DNA of 64,000 nt from Chrysemys picta bellii (lineage: Eukaryota). Where the stretch lies: positions 110,298,001 to 110,362,000 of the forward strand of contig NC_088798.1 of assembly GCF_011386835.1 (NCBI RefSeq), written 5' to 3'. Positions within the stretch are counted from its first letter, which is position 1; each line of letters opens with the position of its first letter. Positions 8,680-61,502 of this stretch are shown here, in pieces. Below the pieces are notes generated by a model. The model had not been told where the DNA came from. It was given only the letters and a program-made list of their open reading frames with translations, and did no database searches. The translations under genes and the position numbers were made by a program.

Positions 8680-8880
8680 GAGGGGGGCTGCCGGGAGTTG
8701 TAGTCCCGTCCCCTGCGGCTGCGCGCGGCGCTGAGTGCGCAGGGGCTGCCGGGAGTTGTAGTCCCGTCCCGTGAGCTGCGCGCGGCCTTATATGGCGTTT
8801 GGGGGGCACGCGGCGCTGAGTGCGCAGGGGCTGCCGGGAGTTGTAGTCCTGTCCCCTGCGGCTGCGCGCAGCCTTACGTG
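8680..8880 (+). promoter_or_regulatory. TMED9 CpG promoter with three tandem ZNF143/THAP11-type GGGAGTTGTAGTC motifs
   Basis: GGGAGTTGTAGTC at 8693-8705, 8751-8763 and 8836-8848, embedded in duplicated 58-85 bp blocks. Confidence 0.7.
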
Positions 8881-8896
8881 GCGTTCGGCGGGTAAG

Positions 8897-11505
8897 ATGG
8901 CGGCTCGCGGCGGACTGCTGGGCCTGGTCCTGCTGCTGCTCGTTGGCGCCGTTTCCCGCGGCTTCGGCCTCTACTTCCACCTGGGCGAGACCGAGCGCCG
9001 CTGCTTCATTGAGGAGATCCCGGACGAGACCATGGTGATAGGTGCGGGGGGCGCCCCGGCGGGGCGAGCGGGGAGGGGCGGGGAGACTATGGAGAGAGGT
9101 GCGGGGGGGGGAACTACTGGGGACCCTGTAGCGGGGATAGGAGGAAAGTCTGTGGCGCGGGCGGGCGGGGGGTAGACGGGCATGACGGGTGCTGGGGGCT
9201 GTTCTGTGTTTGATGACCAGGGTGGTTCTCAAAGTGTTGCCCTCCCCTGCAGGGAATTACCGTACCCAGCTATACGATAAGCAGCGGGAGGATTACATGC
9301 CTGCCACACCTGGGCTTGGCATGTTCGTGGAGGTGAAGGACCCTGATGATAAGGTACCTGGGTTGGGAGGAGAAGATACTGGCCCATTTCAGACCTGGGT
9401 CAGCATAGGTGCTCTGGTTCCCCAACCTGAATCTGCCCTCATACCCATCCCATTGGGGCCTGGAAGCTACAGTAGCCGGGTAATAGGACTGAGCAGCCCA
9501 GAGCCAATGCCCATGGTGAGGGGCACCCCTTCAGCATCTGCTTGCAGTTCCACTGAGGTGTCTTATCTGGGCTCTAGCTCTGGTTGCTCTGTTTCATAGA
9601 ATCATAGGACTGGAAGGGACGTCAAGAGATCATCTAGTCCAGTCCCCTGCACTCCTGGCAGGACTAAGTATTATCTAGAGCATCCCTGACAGGTTTTTGT
9701 CCAACCTGATCTTAAAAATCTCCAATGATGGAGATTCCACAACCTCCCTAGGCAGGTGCCACACACAGACCACGTTGACTCGTGAGACACCAGATTTCCC
9801 TGGTATTAATCACCATAGATAATGGGGGTTCTGCTGTGGAACAGGCTGTCTTTGTGGCATGGGGGCAAGCTCTGGGTTTAGGTGGATCTGCCTGATTTTT
9901 CTGTTGCTGCCTGGTTCTGAGAGGTTCTTGATTCACCACCATGTTGCTTAGTTCTAGAAATTCCATTTGAACTATGAAATTAGAAAAATGTCTTTTTTTA
10001 AGCTGCTTCTCTGCAGTGTCAGCTACTTTAATCAGTGCAGTGACTGCTGATCCCTGTGGTACATGGTGCCCACTCACTTCCAGTCATAAGAACGGCCATA
10101 CTGGGTCAGACCAACGGTCCATCTAGCCCAGTATCCTGTCTTCCGACAGTGGACAGTGCCAGGTGCCCCAGAGGGAATGAACAGAATGGAATCATGAAGT
10201 GATCCATCCCCTGTCACCCGTTCCCAGCTTCTGGCAAACAGAGGCTAGGGATACCATCCCTGCCCAGTCTAGTTAAACTCCATGATCTAAGACTCTAGAC
10301 TTATGGATGGTCTGGTCCTGAACTTAGAGCTCCATCTAGGCCCAACCTTCCTTCTCTGGCAGTTTCCATCCCCTCCTCCCCAGTGCATTTGGTTGGAGCC
10401 CTGCTTGTTTTGAAATTGCTTATGAACAGATTCTAAGGTTCAGCAGAATGGTATCTCAGGAGAGCAACTAACTGAAATGCTGATCTGGCCCTGTGTTCTT
10501 GGCCCGATGTGATGCTTTAACTGTCACCTGGGCAGATAGCACAGGGGACTTGAAGAGGGTCTCTAGCCCCTGTAAATCTGCCTTGCTACCTAGATCTCAC
10601 CACTAAACAATTTGCATCGGGCAGACAGACCCTTTAGCTATAGTACCAAGTATTCTGCCAGAAACCTTGATGCACTCTGCTGTCAGAGCCATGGATGTAC
10701 TGGATTGGCTGTGCTCTGGAGGTTGCCATTACTGCCCTGTCCTTCTCTTCCAGGTCATCTTGTCGAGGCAGTATGGCTCTGAGGGCAGATTCACCTTCAC
10801 CTCACACACTCCTGGAGAGCATCAGATCTGCCTGCATTCTAACTCCACCAAATTCTCCCTCTTTGCAGGGGGTATGCTGGTAAGGTGGGCCGATGCGGGA
10901 CAGAGAGGAGAGGGATGGTCCAGGCCATGTAGCATTGTGCTGGGGCAGAACACCTGACTGTGTTCTCTTGTCTTGCTGCAGAGGGTACATCTGGATATCC
11001 AGGTGGGGGAACATGCCAATGACTATGCTGAGATTGCTGCCAAGGACAAGTTGAGTGAGCTGCAGCTCCGGGTGCGGCAGCTCATTGAGCAGGTGGAGCA
11101 AATCCAGAAGGAGCAGAACTACCAGCGGGTGAGGAACCTCAAGCAGCCTGGCCAGCCCTGCACTCTACACTGGAGATCCAGCAGGGGCTGTGTTCATGGT
11201 TTGAGAAGGAGGTTCCTGGGTGGGAGGGTGGGGGGAGCCTACCCAGCTGGACAGTGACTATTAGAGAGTTCTGAGGGCCATGGGAAGCCACTGGTCTCTG
11301 GGGCCTGGGAGGATCAGTCTGTATTTGCTTCTGACCTGTTGTTTCCTTGCTGCAGTGGCGAGAGGAGCGGTTCCGCCAGACCAGTGAGAGCACCAACCAG
11401 CGGGTTCTCTGGTGGTCCATTGTCCAGACCCTCATTCTTGTTGCCATTGGTGTATGGCAGATGAGGCACCTCAAGAGTTTCTTTGAAGCCAAGAAACTGG
11501 TATAA
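8897..11505 (+). CDS. TMED9: Transmembrane emp24 domain protein 9 (p24 alpha2), 5 exons, 222 aa
   Basis: join(8897..9041,9253..9353,10754..10879,10982..11128,11356..11505), 669 nt, [35 protein letters not shown] start, coiled coil, TM helix, FFEAKKLV* tail. Confidence 0.96.
9596..9752 (-). mobile_element. CR1 LINE 3' end fragment
   Basis: tcatagaatcatag (reverse complement of the CR1 ATTCTATG tail) followed by ggactggaagggac...atctagtccag...ctccaatgatggagattccacaacctccctagg. Confidence 0.8.
10084..10275 (-). mobile_element. CR1-type LINE 3' end fragment (second subfamily)
   Basis: cataagaacggccatactgggtcagacc...ggtccatctagcccagtatcctgtc, a recalled reptile CR1 3' end in reverse orientation. 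Confidence 0.7.
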
Positions 11506-13498: not shown

Positions 13499-17052
<3,554 letters not shown>

Positions 17053-41033: not shown

Positions 41034-43165
41034 TCTGAATTTGGTACTTCTGGCTCCTGTGGCTGCTTCTTTCTCTCCCGCCATGGGGGGACCCCAGCGG
41101 CTGTCCCTGGGTGCTCAGGGGTGAGTTCCAGGCCTCCCAGCTGACAGGATAGGGCAGCAGGGAAGCTGGTATTTACTCTGCACCCCAGGAGGTTGCTGCA
41201 GCCAAAACTCCATTTGCTGCTGACCAGGGATGTTGAGCTAAAGGCAGGCGTCTGGGAAGGGGAGCAGTGCTCCCAGCGTGGGGACCATGGGCCCAGTTTC
41301 TGAGGATGATGCAGACAGGGCTCCACGTGGCCTGGCCCCTGGCTGTCCAGTGGTAGCAGCAGGGCTGGTCCCACCTCCAGGAGCTGCTTGCTCCATTGTG
41401 TGTGTTCCTGCTGGAGGGGGGGGCTCTGGTTTGTCTCTAATGGGCTGGCAGCAACATGCTGCTCTTTAAGGTCAGACACAAGCCCCCACGAGCAGTCCTG
41501 GTGCAGTGCCACTTGCCTCTCCCAGCTGCAGGTTATCTGATGGGTGGAGAGGAACCAATCTACTCAGTCCTGCTGGACACAGGTGCTGGGGGCTGGCAGG
41601 GTCAATCTCTCTGGCCTCATCCTGGCAGCACCCTCTGGACTCTGCTTGGAACTGAAATACACAAGATGCCAACAGCTGTTGTACCCTCAACCACTGGCCA
41701 GCGTCTCCTTTTAAATCACCTCTTGTCATGGTGGTGCCTGGCACCTGTCCATGCCATCAACCTGGCTTGGCCCTGCAGTGCCAGGCTGTGCACACACAGC
41801 AGTGCTCCTGGCTGCTAGCCCAGTGGGGCTTGGCTCGGAGGAGCTGGAGCCCGAGCCTGGGATCTGCGGCAGGTTTGTTATTCTGGGCCAGCTGGCTGTT
41901 GAAATCTCGTTTGTTTGCTGGTGCCCACATCAGGCCAGGGCTCTGTGGTGCCGGGCTCTGATCCTTGCAGCAGGTTTACACCCAACAATTAGAGCCATGG
42001 GGAGGGGAGGTGGGACCCAGGAGAGGGCGGCACCAAAACTTGGCAGGGAAGCCAGAAACCAAGCTCCTGCCGCAGATGCCACAGGGCAGAGTCGTGGCGT
42101 CTCAGGAAGAACCGAGTGTTTAGATTATTGGGTTGGTGGTGAAACCGGTTTCCTGAATTCCACAACATTGATTCACACTCAGAGAGATGGCGGCCCGGCC
42201 GGGTGTAACTGTCAGTGCTCTGCTGCAGGGGCCCTTCTCCAACAGCCCTGCGAGCAGCTCGCCCTTGCTTGGGATCCTAAGACTACGACAGCCCTTCCTC
42301 CGCATGCTTCTAGCCTGTGCAGACACCCTCGTATTGCCACTGTCTCTCTTTGACCCAAGCACCATCACTGAACCAAAGGGACCCTGTGGAACCCTTTCCA
42401 AACCACCCCAGCAAAATGCTCTCTTCTTAGGGCTGGTGTGGCCAGGGCAGCAGTGACAGCATTGTTCAGCCTGACAACTCCATTGCCTGATTCCAGCCCC
42501 TCGCTCCTAATTACACCCCTGTCTAGCTCCTGTACAACTCACCTCCCCTCTCAGGTAGGGTGATGGCGGGTGGAGATGTGAAGTCATATATCTGTCACTG
42601 AACCAAGCTGCTAAGCAGCTCCCTCCAGCCTGGATGCTGCATGTCTCCTCTCTGAAAACATACCCAGACCTGCATATGCCACTCCATGCCTGCTCCTGGC
42701 CAGGTGCAGGCAGCCGGGCCCCTCGTTGGGCTGGTGCTCAGACAGGGGCATGTGCAGCACCGTGAGGCCCTGGCAGCTGGAGCTCTGCATGCCCCCAGAG
42801 AAGCCACTAGTGCTTCCTGGGGTTGGCCTGGCAGCCCAAAGCTCTGAGCTGAGAGATGGGTCCACTGCAGAATCCTGGGCCCCTTACCAGCTCCTGTGTT
42901 CAGCTGGGCCCAGGGAACCCTGGTCACTGTCTCACCCTTCCCCAGGGCCTGGCATGAGGCAGGAGCCCCTGAGTGCAGCTGCAGCCCCTGTGCTGTGGGC
43001 TGAGGCAGGGAGCAGGGGCTGGGGGGAGCCAGGGACACCCCGACTCCAGGCATGTGGGGCCAGTACGAAGGGCACGAGATCACAAATGGTATTGTGGGTT
43101 CCCTGCTAGGTGCTGACCCAACAGGCTTTCTTCCCTCCCCAGGAGCAGAGCCCGCCTGGGCCTTG

Positions 43166-43775
43166 ACCGCCCCCCCCCCGGCACCATTCCCTCCTCCCCA
43201 GTACTGACCCCCCCCCCGCACCATTCCCTCCCCCCCAGTACTGACCCCCCCCGAACCGTTCCCTCCCCCCAGTACTGACCCCCCCCACACCGTTCCCACC
43301 CTCCCGCACTGACCCCCCCGAACCCTCTGCACCGTACCCTCCCCCCAGCACTGACCCCCCCCTCCCCGCACCGTTCCCACCCTCCCGCACTGACCCCCCG
43401 AACCCCCTGCACGGTACCCTCCCCCCAGCACTGACCCCCCCGCACCATTCCCTCCCCCCAGCACTGACCCCCCCCGCACCGTTCCCACCCTCCCGCACTG
43501 ACCCCCCCCGACCCCCCTGCACGGTACCCTCCCCCCAGTACTGACCCCCCCCGAACCGTTCCCTCCCCCCAGCACTGACCCCCCCGCACCGTTCCCACCC
43601 TCCCGCACTGACCCCCCCGAACCCTCTGCACGGTACCCTCCCCACAGTACTGACCCCCCCCCGAACCGTTCCCTCCCCCCAGCACTGACCCCCCCGCACC
43701 GTTCCCACCCTCCCGCACTGACCCCCCCCGACTCCCCTGCACGGTACCCTCCCCCCAGCACCGACCCCCCCCGCG
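43166..43775. repeat. C-rich minisatellite (about 33-40 bp units) upstream of the RMND5B promoter
   Basis: Alternating (A/G)CACTGACCCCCCCGCACCGTTCCCACCCTCCC and ..CCCCGAACCCCCTGCACGGTACCCTCCCCCCA variants. Confidence 0.9.
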
Positions 43776-43779
43776 AGGA

Positions 43780-44125
43780 GCCGCGCGCTGCACGGCAGTT
43801 TGGGTGCCCAGACGGCCAGGAATCTCGGGCTAAACACCCAGGAAATGGTACATTCCAGCGCTCTCCCCTTCCCCCTGCCCGGCGAGGATGGTTTGCCCGC
43901 ACTGTGGACGGGCGGTACCAAGCTCGGGAGACCAGGGGGCGGCGAGTCCCTAGGTAAGCCCCTCCCGCAGTAATGGGCCAGTCTAGCCCCCTCCCACGCC
44001 GGCTGCCGTAGGAACCTACCACTGCGCGTCTCCCGGGGAGGGGGATCCCGCCGCGCAGTGGGACAGTCCGGGCCCCGGACGCGGCAGCTGCCGGAAGCGC
44101 TGGGCTGAGGCCGCCCCGGCGCCGG
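43780..44125 (+). promoter_or_regulatory. RMND5B CpG promoter and probable non-coding exon 1 (donor CGG|GTGAGT at 44125/44126)
   Basis: CpG island, CCGGAAG ETS motif near 44091 and a consensus donor; the first coding exon starts at an acceptor 13 nt before the ATG. Confidence 0.7.
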
Positions 44126-44215
44126 GTGAGTGGAGCGGGCCGAGCCCGGCGGCCTCGGGGGCTGGAGCCCCAGCTCGGCAGGGTCCGGGGGGCCGCGCGT
44201 GCGGAGGGGGGGGCG

Positions 44216-47200
44216 ATGGAGCCGCGCGCCTGTGTGGTGCGCTGCCCCCGCAGGGTCCGTCGGGCGATGGAGCCGCGCGCCTGTGCGGTGCGTTCCCCCC
44301 GCAGGGCCCGTCGGGCGATGGAGCCATTGGCCTGTGCGGTGCGTTCCCCCCGCAGGGCCCGTCGGGCGATGGAGCCATTGGCCTGTGCGGTGCGTTCCCC
44401 CCGCAGGGTCCGTCGGGTGATGGAGCCATTGGCCTGTGCGGTGCGCTCCCCCCGTAGGGCCCGTCGGGCGATAGAGCCATTGGCCTGTGCGGTGCGTTCC
44501 CCCCGCAGGGTCCGTCGGGCGATGGAGCCATTGGCCTGTGCGGTGCGTTCCCCCCGCAGGGTCCGTCGGGTGATGGAGCCATTGGCCTGTGCGGTGCGTT
44601 CCCCCCGCAGGGTCCGTCGGGTGATGGAGCCATTGGCCTGTGCGGTGCGTTCCCCCCGCAGGGTCCGTCGGGTGATGGAGCCATTGGCCTGTGCGGTGCG
44701 CTCCCCCCGTAGGGCCCGTCGGGCGATAGAGCCATTGGCCTGTGCGGTGCGTTCCCCCCGCAGGGTCCGTCGGGTGATGGAGCCATTGGCCTGTGCGGTG
44801 CGTTCCCCCCGCAGGGTCCGTCGGGTGATGGAGCCATTGGCCTGTGCGGTGCGCTCCCCCCGCAGGGTCCGTCGGGGGATGGAGCCATTGGCCTGTGCGG
44901 TGCGTCCCCCCCGCAGGGTCCGTCGGGTGATGGAGCCGCGCGCCTGTGCGGTGCGCTCCCCCCGCAGGGCCCGTCGGGGGATGGAGCCATTGGCCTGTGC
45001 GGTGCGCTCCCCCCGCAGGGCCCGTCGGGTGATGGAGCCATTGGCCTGTGCGGTGCGTCCCCCCCGCAGGGCCCGTCGGGTGATGGAGCCATTGGCCTGT
45101 GCGGTGCGTTCCCCCCGCAGGGCCCGTCGGGCGATGGAGCCATTGGCCTGTGCGGTGCGTTCCCCCCGCAGGGCCCGTCGGGCGATGGAGCGATTGGCCT
45201 GTGCGGTGCGCTGCCCCCGCAGGGTCCGTCGGGCGATGGAGCCATTGGCCTGTGCGGTGCGTCCCCCCCGCAGGGCCCGTCGGGTGATGGAGCCATTGGC
45301 CTGTGCGGTGCGCTCCCCCCCGCAGGGTCCGTCGGGTGATGGAGCCATTGGCCTGTGCGGTGCGTTCCCCCCGTAGGGTCCGTCGGGTGATGGAGCCATT
45401 GGCCTGTGCGGTGCGTTCCCCCCGCAGGGTCCGTCGGGGGATGGAGCCATTGGCCTGTGCGGTGCGTCCCCCCCGCAGGGTCCGTCGGGTGATGGAGCCG
45501 CGCGCCTGTGCGGTGCGCTCCCCCCGCAGGGCCCGTCGGGTGATGGAGCCATTGGCCTGTGCGGTGCGCTCCCCCCGCAGGGCCCGTCGGGTGATGGAGC
45601 CATTGGCCTGTGCGGTGCGCTCCCCCCCGCAGGGTCCGTCGGGTGATGGAGCCATTGGCCTGTGCGGTGCGTTCCCCCCGTAGGGTCCGTCGGGTGATGG
45701 AGCCATTGGCCTGTGCGGTGCGTTCCCCCCGCAGGGTCCGTCGGGGGATGGAGCCATTGGCCTGTGCGGTGCGTCCCCCCCGCAGGGTCCGTCGGGTGAT
45801 GGAGCCGCGCGCCTGTGCGGTGCGCTCCCCCCGCAGGGCCCGTCGGGTGATGGAGCCATTGGCCTGTGCGGTGCGCTCCCCCCGCAGGGCCCGTCGGGTG
45901 ATGGAGCCATTGGCCTGTATGGTGCGTTCCCCCCGTAGGGCCCGTCGGGCGATGGAGCCATTGGCCTGTGCGGTGCGTTCCCCCCGCAGGGCCCGTCGGG
46001 TGATGGAGCCATTGGCCTGTGCGGTGCGTTCCCCCTGTAGGGTCCGTCGGGCGATGGAGCGATTGGCCTGTGCGGTGCGGTGCGCTGCCCCCGCAGGGTC
46101 CGTCGGGCGATGGAGCCATTGGCCTGTGCGGTGCGTCCCCCCCGCAGGGCCCGTCGGGTGATGGAGCCATTGGCCTGTGCGGTGCGTCCCCCCCGCAGGG
46201 TCCGTCGGGTGATGGAGCCATTGGCCTGTGCGGTGCGTTCCCCCCGTAGGGTCCGTCGGGTGATGGAGCCATTGGCCTGTGCGGTGCGTTCCCCCCGCAG
46301 GGTCCGTCGGGGGATGGAGCCATTGGCCTGTGCGGTGCGTCCCCCCCGCAGGGTCCGTCGGGTGATGGAGCCGCGCGCCTGTGCGGTGCGCTCCCCCCGC
46401 AGGGCCCGTCGGGTGATGGAGCCATTGGCCTGTATGGTGCGTTCCCCCCGTAGGGCCCGTCGGGCGATGGAGCCATTGGCCTGTGCGGTGCGTTCCCCCC
46501 GCAGGGCCCGTCGGGCGATGGAGCCATTGGCCTGTGCGGTGCGTTCCCCCCGTAGGGCCCGTCGGGCGATGGAGCCGCGCACCTGTGCGGTGCGTTCCCC
46601 CCGTAGGGCCCGTCGGGCGATGGAGCCATTGGCCTGTGCGGTGCGCAGCCCCCGCAGGGCCCGTCGGGGGATGGAGCCATTGGCCTGTATGGTGCGTTCC
46701 CCCCGTAGGGCCCGTCGGGCGATGGAGCCGCGCGCCTGTGCGGTGCGCTCCCCCCGCAGGGTCCGTCGGGTGATGGAGCCGCAGGCCTGTGCGGTGCGCT
46801 CCCCCCGCAGGGTCCGTCGGGTGATGGAGCCATTGGCCTGTGCGGTGCGCTCCCCCCGCAGGGCCCGTCGGGTGATGGAGCCACGCGCCTGTGCGGTGCG
46901 CTGCCCCCGCAGGGTCCGTCGGGCGATGGAGCCGCGCGCCTGTGCGGTGCGCTGCCCCCGTAGGGTCCGTCGGGTGATGGAGCCATTGGCCTGTGCGGTG
47001 CGCTCCCCCCGCAGGGCCCGTCGGGTGATGGAGCCGCGCGCCTGTGCGGTGCGCTGCCCCCGCAGGGTCCGTCGGGCGATGGAGCCGTGTGCCTGTGCGG
47101 TGCGCTGCCCCCGTAGGGTCCGTCGGATGATGGAGCCGTGTGCCTGTGGGGCGCGTTCCCCCCGCAGGACCTGTCGGGCGATGGAGCCGTGCGCCTGTGC

Positions 47201-47335
47201 GGTGTGCTCCCCCCGTAGGGCCCGTCGGATGATGGAGCCATGCGCCTGTGCGGTGTGCTCCCCCCCGTAGGGCCCGTCGGATGATGGAACCGCACGCCTG
47301 TGTTGTGTGCTTCTCCCCATAGGGTCCGTTGGGTG
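44216..47335 (+). repeat. 51-bp minisatellite, about 61 copies, derived from the RMND5B acceptor/start-codon junction
   Basis: Consensus ATGGAGCCATTGGCCTGTGCGGTGCGTTCCCCCCGCAGGGTCCGTCGGGTG. The distance from the first ATG (44216) to the true ATG (47336) is 3120 = 61x51+9; the extra 9 nt come from four +1 units and one 5-nt duplication. Confidence 0.97.
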
Positions 47336-50300
47336 ATGGAGCTGTGCGCCTGTGTGGAGCGAGAGCTGGACAAAGTGCTGCACAAGTTCCTGAGCTACGG
47401 GCAGCACTGTGAGCAGAGCCTAGAGGAGCTGCTCTGTTACGTGAGCCAACTGCGCCAGGAGCTCGGCAGCGCAGGTACCACAGCTCGCCAGCATGATGTA
47501 GTGACACAGCACAGTGCTGCTTCTGGAGCCGGTCCTGTTCCCAAACCGCAGCTTGGTACTTAGGAGCAGAGCGCCGTGTCCGGGCGGGGTGGTCACTGAT
47601 GGCAGATCTATGGATGGAGACTGACCTCCACTGAGCAGACAGCCCTGTGGCTCAGCCCTCGTTCTGACTAGGGAGGCTGTAGGCCAGTGTGGGGACACGC
47701 CTGCTCTTGGGGGGCGGAATCCTAGCAGAGCTTTCTGTCCGGGCGCGCGCTGTGAGGTGTCTGCCTGCAAAGGGTGCTATTGAGTATCTGAGGCTGTTGC
47801 TCTAGACCAGACGTGGGCAAATTACGGCCCATGGGACCGTCCTGCCCGGCCCCTGAGATCCCGGCCGGGGAGCCTGTCCCCCCTCCCCCGCAGCCACGCC
47901 ACAGTGCGGGCCGCGCTCTGGCCCGCTGCTCCCACTGGGCAGCGTGGGGAGCGCAGCTGGCTCTGGCCGGGTGTCGTGGCTGTGAGCTCCTGCTGCTGGT
48001 AAGGGGGTGGGGAGCAGGGGGGTTGGGTAAGGGAGCGGGGAGTCCTGGGGGGCAGTCAGGGAGCAGGGGGTGATTGGATGGGGCAGAGATTCGGGGGAGG
48101 CAGTCAGGGGATGGGGAACAGGGAGGGTTGGGAGTGGGAGTCCCGGGGGGGCTGTCAGGGGGCGGGGGTGTGGACAGGGGTCGGGGCAGTCAGGGGACAG
48201 GGAGCAGGGGGGTTGGTTAAGGGGCGGGGGTCCCGGGAGGGGGTGGTCAGGGGACAAGGAGAAGGGGGGGTTGGACGGGTTGGGGGCTCTGAGGGGGGCA
48301 GTCAGGAGGCGGGGGCCAGGCTGTTTGGGGAGGCACATCCTTCCCTACCCGGCCCTCAATACAGTTGCACAACCCCGATGTGGCCCTCGGGCCAAAAAGT
48401 TTGCTCACCCCTACTCTAGACCAGCACTGGTCAAAGCCCTCGGCTGCACCAACCATTTCCAGCTGCTCCCATTCAGTTCTGCATTATCTGGCCCCTGGGC
48501 GCTCAGGCTGCTCCGGATCCCAGCCCTGCAGCGGGGAGCAGTTCCCAAACTCGGGTGGATTAGAGGTGGTTTAGTTAAACGGAAGTCACACCGCAGTCTA
48601 GCACAGGGCTCGTTGTTCTGGCGGGGGAGGGGGAGTTCTGGTGCATGGTGCAGAGTTTGGCAGATGTAGCTCAGAGCTACTGCTTTTCTGGTGCAAAGCC
48701 TTAGCAGTAAGGGCCTTGCACTTCCTGGAATAGGCTCCTGGCTAGTCCGCGCAGCCAGGTCTGAAGAGCCTTTCTGCTGCAGCCCTGCAGGGGGCACCGC
48801 TCTCTGCCACGCTCTCCCTGGTGATGGCCCAGTGCTGTCGGAAGATCAAAGACACGGTGCAGAAACTGGCCTCGGACCATAAAGATATTCACAGCAGTGT
48901 CTCCAGGGTGGGCAAAGCCATCGATAGGGTGAGTACTCCCTTTCGTCTAGAGTCCAGGGGCTGGACCTGGGCACCAGATGGGAATCCCTGCCTTAGTGAT
49001 GGCTTTCGCTCCCATTGGTTCTTTGGCCCTCGGCAGGCTGGAGCATGGGAAGAAGATTTCCCCCAAGGTCTCCCTCATCTGCTGGTGCCCAGTGGCATCA
49101 TGGTGGGAGCCAGTTTTCATGGTGTTGGGCTTTCTATGGTCCTGAGCATCTCCTGCTCCTGTGCGTTCATGCCCGTTATATGTGCTGCAGTCAGGATCGG
49201 GGCCCTCCCGTGCTGACGTGTTCTTGGCCCTAAGGAACTCACATTCCACCTCTGTGACGGGCTCCCCGGGGTACAGCTGGAACTGGGGTACTGCTGTGCC
49301 CCCTTAACTCTCCAAACTCTCACAATGCTTTGCTAGTGAAAAGAAGCAAACCCCTCCAGGCGCTGTTATCACTCAGTACAACAGCATGTGGAGCCCACCC
49401 CCAGCTAAATGCTCCCAGAGACACTCATGAATCACATGGAGAAAAGCACCAGCAAATCTTCTAAGACCCCAGTCTTGCACCCCAGAGCTGTTCCGTCTTG
49501 CCCTGGTCAGAAGCCTGACCAGTGTACGTTTATTACCCAGTCTGCCCTCCCTCGATGTGGAGAGGACAGACACTAGCCTTTGTAAACTGAGCTGAGATTT
49601 ACCAAGCACTTCAATTGAAACACACTGTTTTAGGTAAAATATAAAACAGATTTATTAACTACAGAGAGATTTTAAGTGATTAGAAGTGGTAGCCACAAAA
49701 GGTCAGAGATAGTTACCAAAGGAAATAAAAGATAAGTGTGCAGTCTAAATCTTAAACCTTATTACATTAGGCAGTATTGGGATGAAGCAGTTTTTCTCAT
49801 CCCACTGGATGTTGCAAATAGGTTATAGTCCTTAACACACAGGCTTCCCCTTTAAGCCTGGGACCAGTCTCCTCAGTTCAAGTCTTTGTCTTCCCAGTGT
49901 TCTTGTTGCTTCCAGCGTAGGTGGGGGAGGCGAAAGGCCAAGGCATGATGCCGCTGTCCCCTATTTTATATCCTCAGTCCCTGTGCCTGGAAAACCAGGT
50001 GGGCTTTGCTGAGTCATGGAGTTGAGCAATCCCCCATTGTGTGATTCTTGTGCAGCTCTCTTACTGTACTTGTATTGTAAATCCCTTGTTTACAACTCCC
50101 CTGCTGTTTAGTGGTCACTTAACACCTTCCTGGGTGGGGATCACCTCCTCTGTTGTCACTAGAGAACTAGTAACAACCATACAGCAAAATCTCACAACTT
50201 CATACACACAAATGGCATACATATTTGGACAGAACAATGGGTTTCTGCAGATCATGACCTTTCATATGATTCCTTACATGGCATGCTTTGTATGAAATAG

Positions 50301-53300
50301 ATCATAATTATATGATGGGGTGAATATGGGGGGTCCAGGGTGCTGCTTTGAGGCACAGAGCGTCATGACCTCCTACTACTGTGCCGCCACCCACCCAGAA
50401 ATGCGCTGTTGTGGCTCTGAGGCTGTGATCCAGCCAGCCAATTGAATGCAGCTCCATGCAGGGGCCGCAGTGGTTTGGGTGGGAGGGTGCTGTTGTGGGG
50501 TGGCTTTGCAGGCAGCTGCAGGGGGTTTGTTTGTGAGCATGTGATCAGGCCGGGAGGTGACAGATGGGGGGCTGTCCCCTCATTCTCAGGGGCACCACTG
50601 ACTCCTCTCATTCATCTCCCAGAACTTCGATGCCGAGCTCTGCAGCGTGGTCTCGGATTCCGTCTGGGAGTCGCGGGAGAAGCAGCAGCAGATTCTGCAG
50701 ATGGCGATTGTGGAGCACTTGTACCAGCAGGGCATGCTGAGTGTGGCGGAGGAGCTGTCCCAGGTACCAGGGCTGCCGGTCATGAGACTGGTGCTAGCTT
50801 GCCACACAGCAGCATTGTGTGAGGGAGGGTTGTGGCCTCCCTGGGGCAGGGGGAACCAGGAGTGCTGTGACCTGCTGTCTGGTGAGTGGGCCTTACTCAG
50901 CATTAGCCACTGGCAAGGTTCGCTCCAGGCCAGCACCTCTAGCTGACCCAGGCCAGTTGGTATGAGGCCCTGCCCAGCTCTGCAGGGACCGAATTGCAGC
51001 TGCCAAGTCTGCTGCTCTCCTGCATGTGCTCTGTGCTCCAAGGTGGAGGGCCTCTCTCCATCACGCAGGGTAGGAAACCTCACCCATCTCTGGCTGGGGA
51101 GCCTCTCCTGGCACCACCCCTCCGCCCCGGTGCATGCCGCCCTCCCCAAGAGGATGGTGGGATGTGACCACTGGCTCTCATTCTCCACAGGAGTCCACCC
51201 TGAATGTGGACTTGGACTTCAAGCAGCCGTTCTTGGAGCTGAACCGGATCCTGGAAGCGCTGCACGAGCAGGACCTGCGTCCTGCTCTGGAGTAAGAACC
51301 AATCATCTGGGAGTGCCGAGCATCCAGTGCCCCTCCTCGCCCACAGCCTCCCCACCCTTACTGAAAGTAGCCCCTCCCCTTCTGCTAGACTCATGCACCG
51401 AGTCTGGGTTGGGGTATGGGGTGCTTTGGCTGGTCAAGGGAGAGCCCGGTGCACCCCAGCTAACGTGTGATGATCTCACTCACCCTGCCTGCTGGAGCAT
51501 GCACCTTGCACCCCTGTTGGAATGAGGCCTACAAGCACAATGCTCCTTAACGCCCCCTGACCAGCCCTCCTGGGGCAGCGCCATCTGCAGGGCCTGGCAC
51601 ACCCTCCTGCCCATGAGCCACTTATGTTCCTTTTCACCCCAACTGACTCTGGTGCTACCTGGGCAGTCCCTGGAATTATAGACACTGGAGGGAAAGGAGC
51701 CCTCTAGGCCAGCCCGGCCAGGGGCATTTCACACAAAACAGTCTCCAGGAACGGGAATAACCCCATCCTCGTCTTGTCAGGTTGGGCATCAGTGAGAGCT
51801 TCCTGGCTGTCCTGGCCCACCTCCCCAGGACAGCCAGGACTTAGCTGCCCCCTGTTCTTTCCTATCCAGCTGGGCAATCTCAAACAGGCAGCGTCTGCTG
51901 GAGCTGAACAGCTCCCTGGAATTCAAGCTGTATCGTCTCCACTTCATCCGGCTCCTGGCTGGTGGCCCTGACAAGCAGCTGGAGGCCCTGAGCTACGCTC
52001 GCCACTTCCAGCCCTTTGCCCGCCTGCACCAGCGAGGTGAGACTGTGCCAGGTGGGGCCCTGCCACTGGCCTCCCTAGTGGGGCACGGGACTGCCCGGCT
52101 GGGTAGCCCCGTTCCCAGGCTACAGGGGCCCCATCACTAGCCCCGTACTGGAGGCATTGGCTGGTTGGCAGGACAGGGTGGGGGCTGGGGCCATACTGCT
52201 TCTTGAGGCCAACCAGGTGTTGTGTTGTTCAGAGATCCAGGTCATGATGGGCAGCCTGGTGTACCTGCCCCTGGGCATTGAGAACTCCCCGTACTGCCAC
52301 CTGCTGGATGCCCGGCACTGGACAGAGATCTGCGAGACCTTCACCCGCGACGCCTGTGCCCTGCTGGGGCTCTCGGTGGAATCCCCTCTCAGTGTCAGGT
52401 AAGCCCCAGGCCAGGGCCGGCAGGGTCCCCCCTTAGCAGCACCACCAAGTGCTAAGGCCTCTCCCTCTCACGCAGCTTCGCGTCTGGATGTGTGGCGCTG
52501 CCCGTGCTGATGAACATCAAGGCGGTGATTGAGCAGAGACAGTGCACGGGTGTCTGGAGCCACAAGGATGAGCTGCCTGTAAGTGCCATCTCGATGGGGG
52601 GCGGGGGGGCGGGGCGAGGCAGTGGGGCTGACCTCCCTGCGCTCTCTTGGCAGATTGAAATTGAGCTGGGCATGAAGTGCTGGTACCACTCAGTGTTCGC
52701 CTGCCCCATCCTTCGCCAGCAGACGACTGACTCCAATCCGCCTATCAAACTCATCTGCGGGCACGTCATCTCCCGGGACGCGCTCAACAAGCTCATCAAT
52801 GGGGGGAAGTAAGTTTGGTTTCTTGACATGCTCAGGCCGTGGACCCTGCCCCACCTCCGCCCTGCAGCCCCTGTCCTGCAGGCTTGGCCCTCGCCTGGCA
52901 TCACTTTGTGTGACGCAGCCCGGTGCCATGGGAGTGTGAGTGCTCTGAAGATCCCTTGGCCTGTGCCCTGTACCGCCAGGGTTCCTGGCTGGCCTTGTGC
53001 TAGTCTGGGCCAGATCGCCTTCCCGAGCTCCCCTGCAGCTGGGTGCTGCGGGTAGCAGTGAGCCTGAACGGGCTGGGTGCCGTGCATGCTGATGAGCAGG
53101 GCTTGTTATCTCTGGGGCTGGGAAGTAGGGTGCACAAGCAGTGCTGCTGCCTGCCTACGGCCAGCCCCAGGCCTTCCTTAGACTGAGCCTTGAGGGCTGG
53201 ACTGTGCCGGGAGGGGCAGACTTCTGCTGCTGTCGGTCCCCTGCAGTGCCCCAGAGCTCTGCCGTTTTCTCTGTGTTCCCTGGCCTTCCTGCCTGATGCC

Positions 53301-53387
53301 TTTGTCTCTGGACCTCTCCTCAGGCTGAAGTGTCCCTACTGCCCCATGGAGCAGAACCCGGCTGATGGGAAGCGCATCATCTTCTGA
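47336..53387 (+). CDS. RMND5B: E3 ubiquitin ligase RMND5B (GID/CTLH complex RING subunit), 9 coding exons, 393 aa
   Basis: join(47336..47474,48783..48928,50623..50763,51191..51291,51870..52036,52233..52398,52476..52578,52654..52808,53324..53387), 1182 nt, [35 protein letters not shown], LisH/CTLH/CRA segments, degenerate RING ([24 protein letters not shown]). Confidence 0.97.
47808..48413. mobile_element. hAT MITE, 606 bp, in the RMND5B intron following the first coding exon
   Basis: Degenerate TIRs CAGACGTGGGCAAATT / AGTTTGCTCACCCCTA; perfect TSD CTCTAGAC; 3' part shared with the 59245-59759 element. Confidence 0.88.
49253..50367 (-). mobile_element. Probable solo LTR, about 1.1 kb
   Basis: Starts TGTGACG and ends CGTCATG (near-inverted termini); 5-bp TSD ACCTC at 49248-49252 and 50368-50372; AT-rich interior with TTTATT motifs; no ORF. 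Confidence 0.65.
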
Positions 53388-53905
53388 CGCTGGTGGGGTT
53401 GGAAGGACTGTGGCAATAGGTCACTGCTCTTCCCCTTAGATGGCCTGTCCCACCCTCGCAGTGCGAGAGGCGGTGGTGCTGCCCACGGCAGGGCATGGGC
53501 TGCCTGTTAGGCTGAGGGTCTGAGAGCAGCTCCGTCCACTGCAGCCCCATTGGGGTCCCTTCCTTCTGCTGAACCTAGTGCAAGGTCCAGAGCAGTGGGA
53601 CCTGAGCCTGACCACCCTCTGAGACTGGACAGAGCAGCAGTGTGATGTGCTTGCTGCTGCCTGTGTGTGCTCTCCTAGTGATCTGGCTTATGCTGCCCTG
53701 CTCACTCTGCCTGTCCGGAGTGCCGGGCAGCTGTCTGCTCAGTCATAGGCAGACCCCTCCTGGCCGCGAGCGTGGCTACTGGAGCGTTCCGAGCCCTCTG
53801 CCGGGCAGTGGCCGTGCTGTACAGTCCCTTGTGCATTTACTGATATTTTTGGCATTGTAAATATTAAAGCGGGAGCTGCCTGGAGCCATTTTATAAATTC
53901 CAGAA

Positions 53906-53911
53906 AATAAA
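53906..53911 (+). terminator. Probable RMND5B polyadenylation signal AATAAA
   Basis: First AATAAA about 520 nt after the stop, in an AT-rich patch. Confidence 0.65.
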
Positions 53912-54894
53912 GCCTGTTAGCCTTTCCTCCTTGCTCTCGGAGCTCCTTGGGCAGCAGGGAAGGGCCTCCTGGCTCAGGAGGCAGTGTCAGATTTAACCTG
54001 GGAGACAGGAGGGCTGGGTCCTTAACAGCTTGGGGCCAAAGATGACATGAACCCCACTGTAAGAGGGGGCACGCTTTCTGGTGTGGGGGCTGCGGCTATG
54101 TCCCTCTCTGGGTCCTGCCGGCCCTGCATCAGTCTACAAAATAGGGCACAGAAATGAGGGGGAAGAGCTGCTGTTAGATCTGAAAAATGGAGGGGTGAGG
54201 TGGGGTGCATATGGGGGGTGGGGTAAGGAGACAGAATGGGAGGAGGCACATGTGGGCTCCAGGACACTAAGCCTGGGTGGGGTAGCAGCTTTATGACAAA
54301 CAGACCAGTGTCAAGATAAACCCTTTATTCTAAACAGAACCAGGTAACAAATGTCCTACTGTGACTGGCCTGTCCTAGGCTCCTTTGGTTCTTCCCCAGC
54401 CCGAGGGATCACAGAGAAACCCAAGACTGGATAGTGGCTAGCTGTCCTGGAGAACTATAGCACGTGGTCCATCTTTTAGATCCCGTTACTGAACAAAAAC
54501 AGTTCTCTTTCAACTAGAACCAATACAGTAACTGATGTAACCACCTTCAAGTTGCTTTAACACAACTTAACACGGCTCAATCCGTCCCTGAGGGCATTTC
54601 AGCAATCTTCCCCATCTGCAACCCAGGTCTGTAAGACTGGTCCACCTCATGGTCAGTTTGTGACTTGTTTCCATCTTGTGTCTGCTCTCACTTCACTTGT
54701 CGTGGCCACGTTGTCGGGTATCGTGGCAGATGCTTACAATTCCGGGGTAAGATTTTGCCTTTGTCTGTGCTCCTCTTTGGTCGCTGGTGCTTTGACTGGC
54801 CAGTGCCCATCTTGCCAATCTCTCACCAATCTTCTCTTTCCCAGACTCCTTAGTTGTCCTTTGTCCCATAGCTGCTGAGTATTCCGAAGAATCA

Positions 54895-60994: not shown

Positions 60995-61502
60995 GGGGTC
61001 CCAGGCGGGCTCGGTGGGATGGGGCAGGGAGGGGCCCCAGGCTGAGGGAAGTGGCCCCGGTGGGGGGCAGGGAGGGGCTCCAGGCTGAGGGAAGTGACCC
61101 CGGTGGGGGGCAGGGAGGGGCCCCAGGCTGAGGGAAGTGACCCCGGTGGGGGGCAGGGAGGGGCCCCAGGCTGAGGGAAGTGGCCCCGGTGGGGGGCAGG
61201 GAGGGGCACCAGGCGGGCCCGGTGGTTGTGGGGGGCAGGGAGGGGCCCCAGGCGGGCCCGGTGGTTGTGGGGGCAGGGAGGGGCCCCAGGCTGAGGGAAG
61301 TGACCCCGGTGGGGGGCAGGGAGGGGCCCCAGGCTGAGGGAAGTGACCCCGGTGGGGGGCAGGGAGGGGCCCCAGGCTGAGGGAAGTGACCCCGGTGGGG
61401 GGCAGGGAGGGGCCCCAGGCGGGCCCGGTGGTTGTGGGGGGCAGGGAGGGGCCCCAGGCGGGCCCGGTGGTTGTGGGGGGCAGGGAGGGGCCCCAGGCTG
61501 AG
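60995..61502. repeat. G-rich 43-bp (and about 39-bp variant) minisatellite upstream of NHP2
   Basis: GGGGCAGGGAGGGGCCCCAGGCTGAGGGAAGTGACCCCGGTGG; GAAGT recurs at 61048, 61091, 61134 and 61177 (43-bp spacing). Confidence 0.9.

What the first reader, a model, noticed from the sequence alone, without database searches (positions are those of the whole stretch)
44126..47474. RMND5B intron 1 is a tandem array of about 61 copies of the gene's own splice acceptor, leader and start codon
Seen: each 51-bp unit is ATG plus about 8 RMND5B-like codons (unit 1 ATGGAGCCGCGCGCCTGTGTGGTGCG versus the true start ATGGAGCTGTGCGCCTGTGTGGAGCG, 23/26), then a pyrimidine run + YAG|G and a 13-nt leader (GGTCCGTCGGGTG versus true GGTCCGTTGGGTG) before the next ATG. 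The real acceptor is 47321-47322 and the real ATG is 47336. A consensus donor at 44126 lies only 128 nt before the first decoy acceptor (44252-44253). Inference: the spliceosome must skip about 60 near-identical acceptor/ATG modules to make RMND5B. This would be a repeat-encoded splice and initiation decoy array whose length could tune the dosage of a CTLH E3 ligase subunit. I know of no described equivalent.
Basis: partly seen in the sequence, partly recalled or inferred. Interest (0 to 1): 0.92.

Follow-up and report, generated by a model that had tools for sequence, protein, structure and literature searches.

The report
Splice-acceptor minisatellite in turtle RMND5B intron
The first intron of a turtle's RMND5B gene consists almost entirely of about 60 head-to-tail copies of the gene's own splice acceptor and start codon; the cell skips them all, other turtles carry the same array, and it belongs to a repeat type already described in lancelets and in human F7.

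Summary
Window 44216-47335 holds 61 tandem units (51 bp; four of 52, one of 56). Each unit carries ATG plus about 8 RMND5B-like codons, a pyrimidine tract, YAG|G and the 13-nt leader. The last unit runs into the real exon 2.

Spliced RNA contigs from two independent studies join exon 1 (donor 44125|44126) directly to the last acceptor (47322|47323).

The array is not private to this genome. In the same register it has at least 190 copies in Macrochelys and in Dermochelys, about 20 in Carettochelys and about 17-20 in Chelonia mydas. Two squamates lack it; the snake has a ~96-nt intron 1. Units evolve in concert within each species. In Chelonia 16 of 17 units have lost the AG.

Equivalents are described: "mirage" minisatellites of lancelets and the human F7 IVS7 VNTR.

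The proposed role as a dosage-tuning decoy is unsupported. Only one low-depth contig suggests minor use of an array splice site.

Best reading: an old, self-perpetuating mirage-type minisatellite whose pseudo-acceptors stay silent because the exon-proximal site is chosen. The scan's first-stage notes list similar unverified arrays at other genes of this genome.

The parts
44027..44125 (+). Non-coding exon 1 of RMND5B (minimum extent). It contains no ATG and ends at the donor CCGG|GTGAGT.
   Evidence: spliced contigs of X10 and X31 carry 92-99 nt upstream of exon 2, and the last 30 nt equal window 44095-44124 with one mismatch; no ATG in 44027-44125; exon and donor are conserved in Chelonia mydas.
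44126..47322 (+). Intron 1 (3197 nt, GT..AG). About 98% of it is the array.
44126..44215 (+). Unique 5' part of intron 1. It includes a decayed 'unit 0' (CAG|GGTCCG... at about 44177-44215).
   Evidence: sequence; alignable with Chelonia.
44216..47335 (+). Minisatellite of 61 units of 51 bp (four of 52, one of 56). Each unit is ATG + ~8 RMND5B-like codons + pyrimidine tract + YAG|G + 13-nt leader. It has 34 distinct unit types and 6-unit higher-order duplications (units 22-27 = 28-33).
47284..47335 (+). Last unit (61). It supplies the branch region, pyrimidine tract (CTTCTCCCCATAG) and the real acceptor. It reads GGAA instead of GGAG, so 47271-47320 contains no AG.
47323..47474 (+). Exon 2: 13-nt leader, real ATG at 47336, 46 codons + 1 nt, then donor GCAG|GTACCA.
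   Evidence: contig pieces 47322-47470/47474; joint to exon 3 in all four runs.
48783..48928 (+). Exon 3 of RMND5B.
   Evidence: joint 47474|48783; loose end behind 48928 continues as exon 4 sequence..
50602..53930 (+). Remaining coding exons of RMND5B, stop codon at about 53385-53387 and a ~540-nt 3' UTR with AATAAA at 53906.
43250..47500 (.). CpG island (GC 0.70-0.77, CpG observed/expected 0.7-0.9) covering the promoter, exon 1 and the whole array.

Best explanation
This is a 'mirage'-type minisatellite. A ~51-bp piece spanning the 3' end of a formerly short intron 1 and the first 39 nt of exon 2 of RMND5B (acceptor, 13-nt leader, ATG, ~8 codons) was duplicated in tandem in an early turtle. 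It has since been kept as an array by unequal exchange and gene conversion. The array expands, contracts and homogenises separately in each lineage: about 20 to at least 190 copies, 61 in this assembly.

The array is transcribed as part of intron 1 and removed. The mRNA joins exon 1 directly to the last, exon-proximal acceptor. The ~60 upstream pseudo-acceptors are as pyrimidine-rich as the real one. I infer they stay silent because only the last is followed by a real exon body and a strong donor 152 nt downstream (exon definition, or positional selection as shown for the pseudo-donors of human F7 IVS7). Each pseudo-acceptor is instead followed 51 nt later by another acceptor.

The array most likely has little or no adaptive function. 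Its main consequence is a risk of rare cryptic isoforms that carry an upstream ATG.

Shown here: the array, the gene model, the main splice junction, presence in five turtle lineages, absence in two squamates, and concerted evolution. Inferred: single origin, the reason for silence, and near-neutrality.
For: Main junction: in two runs from two studies the 30 nt shown of the loose end before 47323 equal window 44095-44124, i.e. exon 1 up to the base before its last G (1 mismatch), with GT..AG ends. Those polyA-like runs have zero array coverage.

Annotated proteins of four other turtles all start at the last unit's ATG or splice into the last acceptor.

Orthologous arrays in the same register:
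- Macrochelys: 52 bp, at least 192 copies.
- Dermochelys: 52 bp, at least 193 copies.
- Carettochelys: 53 bp x 20.
- Chelonia: about 17-20 units.
Modal units align with the same breakpoints.

No array in Protobothrops (single copy, ~96-nt intron 1) or Pogona.

Concerted evolution: unit identity is 0.83-0.94 within species and 0.70-0.84 between species. The leader of the units tracks each species' real leader.

Minisatellite dynamics: 6-unit higher-order duplications; two unplaced contigs of the same genome that carry the flanks and break inside the array.

Pseudo-acceptors are consensus-grade: 10 of 12 pyrimidines at -16..-5 in 52 of 60, the same as the real site.

Precedents: mirages do not disturb splicing (PMC3087553, PMC3902484); F7 pseudo-sites are functional but silent by position (PMC1557585).
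Against: - Holding the same position across lineages that (from background knowledge) split over 100 million years ago is unusual for a neutral minisatellite and could indicate constraint.
- ATG is kept in at least 95% of units in every species, and YAG in four of five species.
- Contigs drop rare variants, so decoy use below roughly 10% cannot be excluded.
- Only the last 11 units could be laid with reads, so junctions from exon 1 to early units were not examined.
- One contig in run X1 (depth 4 against about 26-30 for the exon 2 contigs) joins an array-internal GT to the real acceptor, so the array is not perfectly silent.
- Exon definition as the reason for silence is inferred, not tested.
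Confidence: 0.72

Rival explanations
1. Functional decoy array. Array acceptors and ATGs capture a fraction of transcripts, producing leaders loaded with upstream ATGs or NMD substrates. Array length would then set the dosage of the CTLH E3 subunit RMND5B.
For: - The array is retained at this position in five turtle lineages.
- Pseudo-acceptors are as good as the real one, and unit ATGs sit in a strong context (G at -3 in 57 of the 60 ATGs counted, real ATG included; G at +4 in all).
- One X1 contig joins a unit-internal donor (GCG|GTGCGC) to 47323 with GT..AG ends. The product would carry a 36-codon upstream ORF that overlaps the real ATG out of frame.
Against: - No decoy-acceptor junction appears in any of the four runs over the last 11 units, and X10 and X31 have no array coverage.
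- Chelonia mydas lost the AG in 16 of 17 units yet keeps the array.
- The unit-internal GT donor is absent in Dermochelys (3 of 171 units) and Chelonia (0 of 17).
- Copy number differs about ten-fold between species.
- Comparable arrays are noted at other genes of this genome (unverified notes), which fits a mutational process rather than gene-specific design.
Confidence: 0.12
2. Promoter-proximal regulatory array. The repeat extends the CpG island just downstream of the transcription start and multiplies transcription-factor sites. In this species 44 of 61 units carry GGCCAATGG on the minus strand, a perfect fit to the NF-Y consensus RRCCAATSR as I recall it.
For: - The array lies 90 nt downstream of exon 1, inside a CpG island with CpG observed/expected of 0.8-0.9.
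- The ATTGG variant is the most amplified unit type.
Against: - The CCAAT motif is essentially absent from the units of the other turtles: 1 of 180, 0 of 171, 0 of 17 and 0 of 21. It is therefore a lineage-specific variant that spread by homogenisation.
- There are no binding or expression data.
- High CpG may simply reflect the young age of the units.
Confidence: 0.08
3. Assembly artefact. The array, or its length, was produced by mis-assembly of a much shorter repeat.
For: Two small unplaced contigs of the same genome carry the flanks and end inside the array, so the region was hard to assemble. The copy number could not be verified with long reads.
Against: - Arrays are present at the same site in four other independently assembled turtle genomes.
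- Unit-like contigs occur in runs of the same species and of a related species.
- 34 distinct unit variants arranged in ordered higher-order blocks are not what a collapsed or inflated assembly produces.
Confidence: 0.05

Closest known systems
'Mirage' minisatellites of lancelets (Adh3, TnC, globin BflGb6/BflGb9, PGBD5); PMC3087553, PMC3902484
   Same: Both are head-to-tail duplications of an intron-exon boundary. In BflGb6 the unit is likewise the 3' end of an intron plus the 5' part of the next exon. Many units keep AG/GT signals and regular splicing is not disturbed. Both vary in length between haplotypes, show concerted evolution inside the cluster, and have edge units that escape homogenisation.
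   Different: The lancelet arrays reported have few copies (3-6 for BflGb6) and units of 10-160 bp. This one is in an amniote, has 61 to at least 190 copies, includes the start codon and 5' leader, fills nearly the whole first intron, and is shared across turtle families.
Human F7 intron 7 37-bp VNTR (Borensztajn et al. 2006, PMC1557585)
   Same: In both, one edge unit of a minisatellite spans the authentic exon-intron boundary, so the real splice site is flanked by a row of near-identical pseudo-sites. These normally stay silent, and the exon-proximal site is the one used.
   Different: F7 multiplies the 5' splice site, with pseudo-donors downstream of the real one, and has only several copies. 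Here the 3' splice site is multiplied, with pseudo-acceptors upstream of the real one, together with the ATG. The competence of the pseudo-sites was shown experimentally for F7 and not here.
Upstream-ATG/uORF or poison-exon (NMD-coupled) control of gene dosage
   Same: If array sites were used, the transcripts would carry upstream ATGs in good context and out-of-frame overlapping ORFs, as in such control systems.
   Different: The main mRNA leader (exon 1 plus 13 nt) has no ATG. Use of array sites is at most minor, and the signals are not conserved in all turtles.

Membership tests
Mirage-type minisatellite (tandem duplication of an intron-exon boundary) | Head-to-tail repeat whose unit contains the end of an intron and the start of the adjoining exon of the host gene | tested here: met
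   the unit is a pyrimidine tract + YAG | 13-nt leader + ATG + ~8 codons, and the last unit is continuous with real exon 2.
Mirage-type minisatellite (tandem duplication of an intron-exon boundary) | The authentic boundary at the edge of the array is the one used; regular splicing is not disturbed | tested here: met
   the exon 1 to 47323 junction is found in two runs from two studies; annotated models in other turtles use the last unit.
Mirage-type minisatellite (tandem duplication of an intron-exon boundary) | Minisatellite dynamics: length variation, concerted evolution, divergent edge units | tested here: met
   Edge units 1-2 and 57-61 diverge from the core type.
Mirage-type minisatellite (tandem duplication of an intron-exon boundary) | Length polymorphism or instability within a species | tested here: inconclusive
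   unplaced contigs with variant flanks break inside the array.
F7-IVS7-type row of silent pseudo splice sites | Pseudo-sites match the authentic site in sequence quality | tested here: met
   pyrimidine counts equal the real site; in Carettochelys and Macrochelys the penultimate acceptor is identical to the real one from the pyrimidine tract through the ATG and first codons.
F7-IVS7-type row of silent pseudo splice sites | Pseudo-sites are functional when the authentic site is removed | not testable with these tools
   This needs minigene mutagenesis.
Regulatory splice decoy, poison exon or uORF system | Decoy sites are used at a measurable, regulated level | tested here: inconclusive
   there is no decoy-acceptor junction in the last 11 units, and one low-depth contig uses a unit-internal GT. 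Contigs cannot quantify rare isoforms.
Regulatory splice decoy, poison exon or uORF system | Decoy signals conserved among species that keep the element | tested here: not met
   Chelonia mydas keeps a pyrimidine tract + YAG|G in only 1 of 17 units. The unit-internal GT is absent in Dermochelys and Chelonia.
Regulatory splice decoy, poison exon or uORF system | Upstream ATG present in the mature main mRNA leader | tested here: not met
   exon 1 (44027-44125) and the 13-nt leader contain no ATG.

The most novel reading that the evidence does not exclude
The array is a functional element conserved in turtles. A set fraction of RMND5B pre-mRNAs would be captured by array acceptors or by 34-36-nt array mini-exons, yielding leaders that carry upstream ATGs and are poorly translated or degraded. 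Array length, which differs about ten-fold among species and probably among haplotypes, would then act as a heritable, quickly mutable setting for CTLH E3 ligase dosage.
Probability: 0.1. Interest if true: 0.85.

Novelty: new member of a known kind. Interest (0 to 1): 0.5.

Why it matters
This is a natural experiment on 3' splice-site choice. Sixty to nearly two hundred consensus-grade acceptors, in some turtles identical to the real one, lie upstream of the authentic site, yet the main mRNA uses only the last. That makes the rules of acceptor selection (exon definition against first-come-first-served) directly testable, as the F7 VNTR did for donors.

It also shows that boundary-spanning 'mirage' minisatellites, known from lancelets, occur in amniotes. 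They can apparently hold one genomic position through the radiation of cryptodiran turtles while the units turn over by concerted evolution.

There is also a practical point. Such arrays mislead gene prediction: an old Chelonia mydas model translates the units as an N-terminal extension.

Tried and rejected
Only 46722-49100 could be laid, so junctions from exon 1 to early units are untested.
- Neither search for sequencing runs returned a run recorded as RNA. RNA status was inferred from the spliced contigs.
- I considered a single long ORF through the array as an N-terminal repeat extension. The 52- and 56-bp units shift the frame and a TGA lies at 47282-47284 in the real ATG's frame, so this was rejected. 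The long minus-strand ORFs are a by-product of GC-rich repeats.
- No Rfam family matches 42500-49000.
- The unit is not a dispersed satellite. In the own genome it occurs only at this locus and on two small unplaced contigs that carry the same flanks.
- The conserved NF-Y/CCAAT function was rejected as a general explanation, because other turtles lack the motif.
- Protein look-ups for Chelonia isoform X4, Gopherus X3 and Carettochelys X2 found no record. Longer isoforms worked for Chelonia and Carettochelys.
- No paper in the library mentions RMND5B together with turtle.
- MaxEntScan scores could not be computed because the model tables are not available. Pyrimidine counts were used instead.
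Full report
**1. The observation**

Tandem Repeats Finder reports one array at 44228-47342 with period 51, 60.9 copies, 91% matches and no indels on average. Cutting the sequence at ATGGAG gives 61 units from 44216 to 47335: 56 of 51 bp, four of 52 bp and one of 56 bp.

The modal unit is ATGGAGCCATTGGCCTGTGCGGTGCGTTCCCCCCGCAGGGTCCGTCGGGTG. It reads as ATG plus about 8 codons resembling the real start (ATGGAGCTGTGCGCCTGTGTGGAGCG), a pyrimidine run, YAG|G, and a 13-nt leader like the real GGTCCGTTGGGTG.

- 59 of 61 units keep ATG.
- There are 60 pseudo-acceptors plus the real one.
- A decayed unit 0 (CAG|GGTCCG...) precedes unit 1 at about 44177-44215.
- The array has 34 distinct unit types and 6-unit higher-order duplications (units 22-27 equal units 28-33).
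- Edge units (1-2 and 57-61) resemble the real exon more than the core units do. This is typical of minisatellites.

The array is not one open frame. The 52- and 56-bp units shift the frame, and unit ATGs fall in all three frames relative to the real ATG.

**2. The gene**

The exon starting at 47336 translates to [18 protein letters not shown].... It matches residues 1-43 of human RMND5A in PDB 8pjn (E 1.2e-10) and proteins named RMND5B from turtles at 87-94% identity.

The remaining exons lie on the + strand up to the stop at about 53385, and AATAAA is at 53906. In the other turtle loci the neighbours are a Fez1-domain gene upstream and a Ribosomal_L7Ae-domain gene downstream.

A CpG island runs from about 43250 to 47500 and includes the whole array.

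**3. RNA evidence**

Runs X10 and X31 come from two different studies and behave as polyA RNA. Their contigs cover exon 2 (47322/3-47474) and exon 3 (48783-48928), joined GT..AG, with no depth in the array or in most of intron 2.

In both runs the contig continues upstream of 47323 for 92-99 nt. The last 30 nt shown, AAGCGCTGGGCTGAAGCCGCCCCGGCGCCG, equal window 44095-44124 with one mismatch. Base 44125 is a G and base 47322 is also a G, so under the GT..AG rule the junction is 44125|47323.

This gives three conclusions:
- The donor at 44126 is used.
- The real acceptor is 47322.
- The main mRNA skips the whole array. Intron 1 is 44126-47322.

Exon 1 (at least 44027-44125) has no ATG.

Runs X1 and X12 carry both spliced and intronic contigs, so they resemble total RNA. 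They contain unit-like contigs at depths compatible with collapsed intronic repeats.

X1 has one contig (depth 4.1, against 25.8-29.6 for the exon 2 contigs) that joins 46946|46947 to 47322|47323 with GT..AG ends. This is a unit-internal donor GCG|GTGCGC spliced to the real acceptor. The skip of 376 nt is not a multiple of the unit length, so it is not an unequal-exchange deletion. The 30 nt on its upstream side occur at units 2, 50 and 54. The donor may therefore be that of unit 2, which would define a 34-nt mini-exon (44254-44287) behind the first pseudo-acceptor. The product would carry a 36-codon upstream ORF overlapping the real ATG out of frame.

That contig is the only hint that array splice sites are used. 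Contigs cannot quantify rare isoforms.

**4. Other genomes**

Orthologous loci were fetched through the protein route (and the look-ups).

| Species | Locus | Array upstream of the start codon |
|---|---|---|
| Macrochelys suwanniensis | L001 | 52-bp units, at least 192 copies, fills the whole 10-kb flank |
| Dermochelys coriacea | L002 | 52-bp units, at least 193 copies, with 104/156-bp higher order |
| Carettochelys insculpta | L005 | 53 bp x 20.4 at 8940-10020 |
| Chelonia mydas, chromosome assembly | L006 | about 17-20 units of 46-57 bp at 10372-11472 |
| Chelonia mydas, older short-read assembly | L003 | about 5 units |
| Protobothrops mucrosquamatus (snake) | L004 | none; one copy and an intron 1 of about 96 nt |
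| Pogona vitticeps (lizard) | L009 | none; one copy |

An ab initio protein model from the older Chelonia assembly translates the units as an N-terminal extension.

The modal units of the five turtles align in one register with the same breakpoints. This favours a single origin before the split of Carettochelys from the hard-shelled cryptodires. From background knowledge that split is well over 100 million years old.

The window's gene body is 88-90% identical to Chelonia, Dermochelys and Macrochelys, and 73% identical to Carettochelys. The window therefore comes from another hard-shelled cryptodire lineage.

Units are 0.83-0.94 identical within a species and 0.70-0.84 identical between species. 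Each species' unit leader matches its own real leader. This is concerted evolution.

Signals in the units, by species:

| Species | Pyrimidine tract + YAG\|G | Unit-internal GT donor | CCAAT variant |
|---|---|---|---|
| Window | 55/56 (all 60 pseudo-acceptors) | 54/56 (GGTGCG in 57/61) | 40/56 (44/61) |
| Macrochelys | 178/180 | 126/180 | 1/180 |
| Dermochelys | 157/171 | 3/171 | 0/171 |
| Carettochelys | 21/21 | 21/21 | 0/21 |
| Chelonia | 1/17 (AG changed to GG) | 0/17 | 0/17 |

ATG is kept in at least 95% of units in every species.

Exon 1 and its donor are conserved between the window and Chelonia.

**5. The own genome**

The unit occurs only at this locus and on two small unplaced contigs. 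L007 carries the upstream flank plus the first units. L008 carries the last units plus exon 2 and intron 2, at 96% identity. Both break inside the array.

This suggests a second, divergent copy of the locus (probably the other haplotype) that could not be assembled through the repeat. It argues against an artefact but leaves the exact copy number unverified.

**6. Why the pseudo-acceptors are skipped (inference)**

The pseudo-acceptors are as pyrimidine-rich as the real site: 10 of 12 pyrimidines at -16..-5 in 52 of 60, with slightly fewer T. In Carettochelys and Macrochelys the penultimate acceptor is identical to the real one from the pyrimidine tract through the ATG and first codons. Site strength therefore cannot explain the choice.

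Only the last acceptor is followed by unique exon sequence and a donor 152 nt downstream. Every pseudo-acceptor is followed 51 nt later by another acceptor, and at best by a weak GT 34-36 nt downstream. Selection of the exon-proximal site by exon definition fits this. It also mirrors the human F7 IVS7 VNTR, where functional pseudo-donors stay silent and the exon-proximal donor is chosen (PMC1557585).

In this window the last unit also reads GGAA instead of GGAG. That leaves an AG-free stretch of 50 nt in front of the real AG.

**7. Comparison with known systems**

[quoted passage not shown] They keep AG/GT signals, vary in length, evolve in concert and do not disturb splicing (PMC3087553, PMC3902484).
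- The F7 VNTR is the donor-side case in humans (PMC1557585).

The present array meets the defining features of a mirage. It differs in degree and setting: an amniote host, 61 to at least 190 copies, inclusion of the leader and start codon, occupation of nearly the whole first intron inside the promoter CpG island, and persistence across turtle families.

No paper in the searchable library mentions RMND5B together with turtle.

First-stage notes of this scan list similar arrays at other genes of the same genome: AQP14, RNF40, PPP6R1, CFB, SLC7A8 and RNF214. None has been followed up and I did not test them. The window itself holds four other GC-rich tandem arrays. Both points fit a genome prone to minisatellite formation.

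**8. Verdict**

The claim that no equivalent is described is refuted. The dosage-tuning decoy function is unsupported, though not excluded at low levels.

The most likely account is an old, self-perpetuating mirage-type minisatellite with positionally silenced pseudo-acceptors (confidence about 0.7).

It is worth a moderate score as an extreme natural test case for 3' splice-site selection, and as evidence that such arrays can persist for a very long time.

Noticed in passing
window 43164-43774; also L006 8611-9882 and L005 7354-7787: A second, C-rich minisatellite (units of about 34 and 110 bp, e.g. CCCCCCCCCGCACCGTTCCCTCCCCCAGCACTGA) lies just upstream of the RMND5B promoter. It is present at the same place in Chelonia mydas and, in a related form, in Carettochelys.
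   Followed up: partly
window 44318-46860 (core units): 44 of 61 units carry GCCATTGGCC, which reads GGCCAATGG on the minus strand. By my recollection of the motif this fits the NF-Y CCAAT-box consensus exactly. The other four turtles' units lack it, so it is a lineage-specific variant that spread through the array.
   Followed up: partly
window 43888-43953; L006 10001-10063: An upstream ATG (MVCPHCGRAVPSSGDRG...) is followed by a donor-like CTAG|GTAAGC. In Chelonia mydas and Lepidochelys kempii, annotated isoforms start here and splice in frame into the real acceptor. In this window the homologous piece is 4 nt longer, so it would be out of frame.
   Followed up: partly
window 52573-52650: The short intron between two C-terminal RMND5B exons is open and in frame (26 codons). 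Its translation appears in predicted proteins from assemblies of sequencing runs (P0286, P0287), and a longer in-frame insert at the same site appears in the Macrochelys model (P0186, 420 aa). It is either a retained-intron isoform or a prediction artefact.
   Followed up: no
G000:C5672 (L007) and G000:C7306 (L008): Two unplaced contigs duplicate the flanks of the array at 86-96% identity and end inside it. They are probably fragments of the other haplotype. L007 is unusually divergent (86-87%) over the C-rich minisatellite and promoter.
   Followed up: partly
window 13556-14026, 61021-61502, 8724-8892: Three further GC-rich tandem arrays lie in the same 64-kb window: a G-rich one with 82-99-bp units, one of 43 bp x 11.6 with a 206-bp higher order, and one of 85 bp x 2. 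The region is dense in minisatellites.
   Followed up: no
window 48150-48420: A stretch of intron 2 collects very high contig depth (up to about 6000) and many loose ends in all four runs. It behaves like a dispersed repeat or transposon fragment.
   Followed up: no
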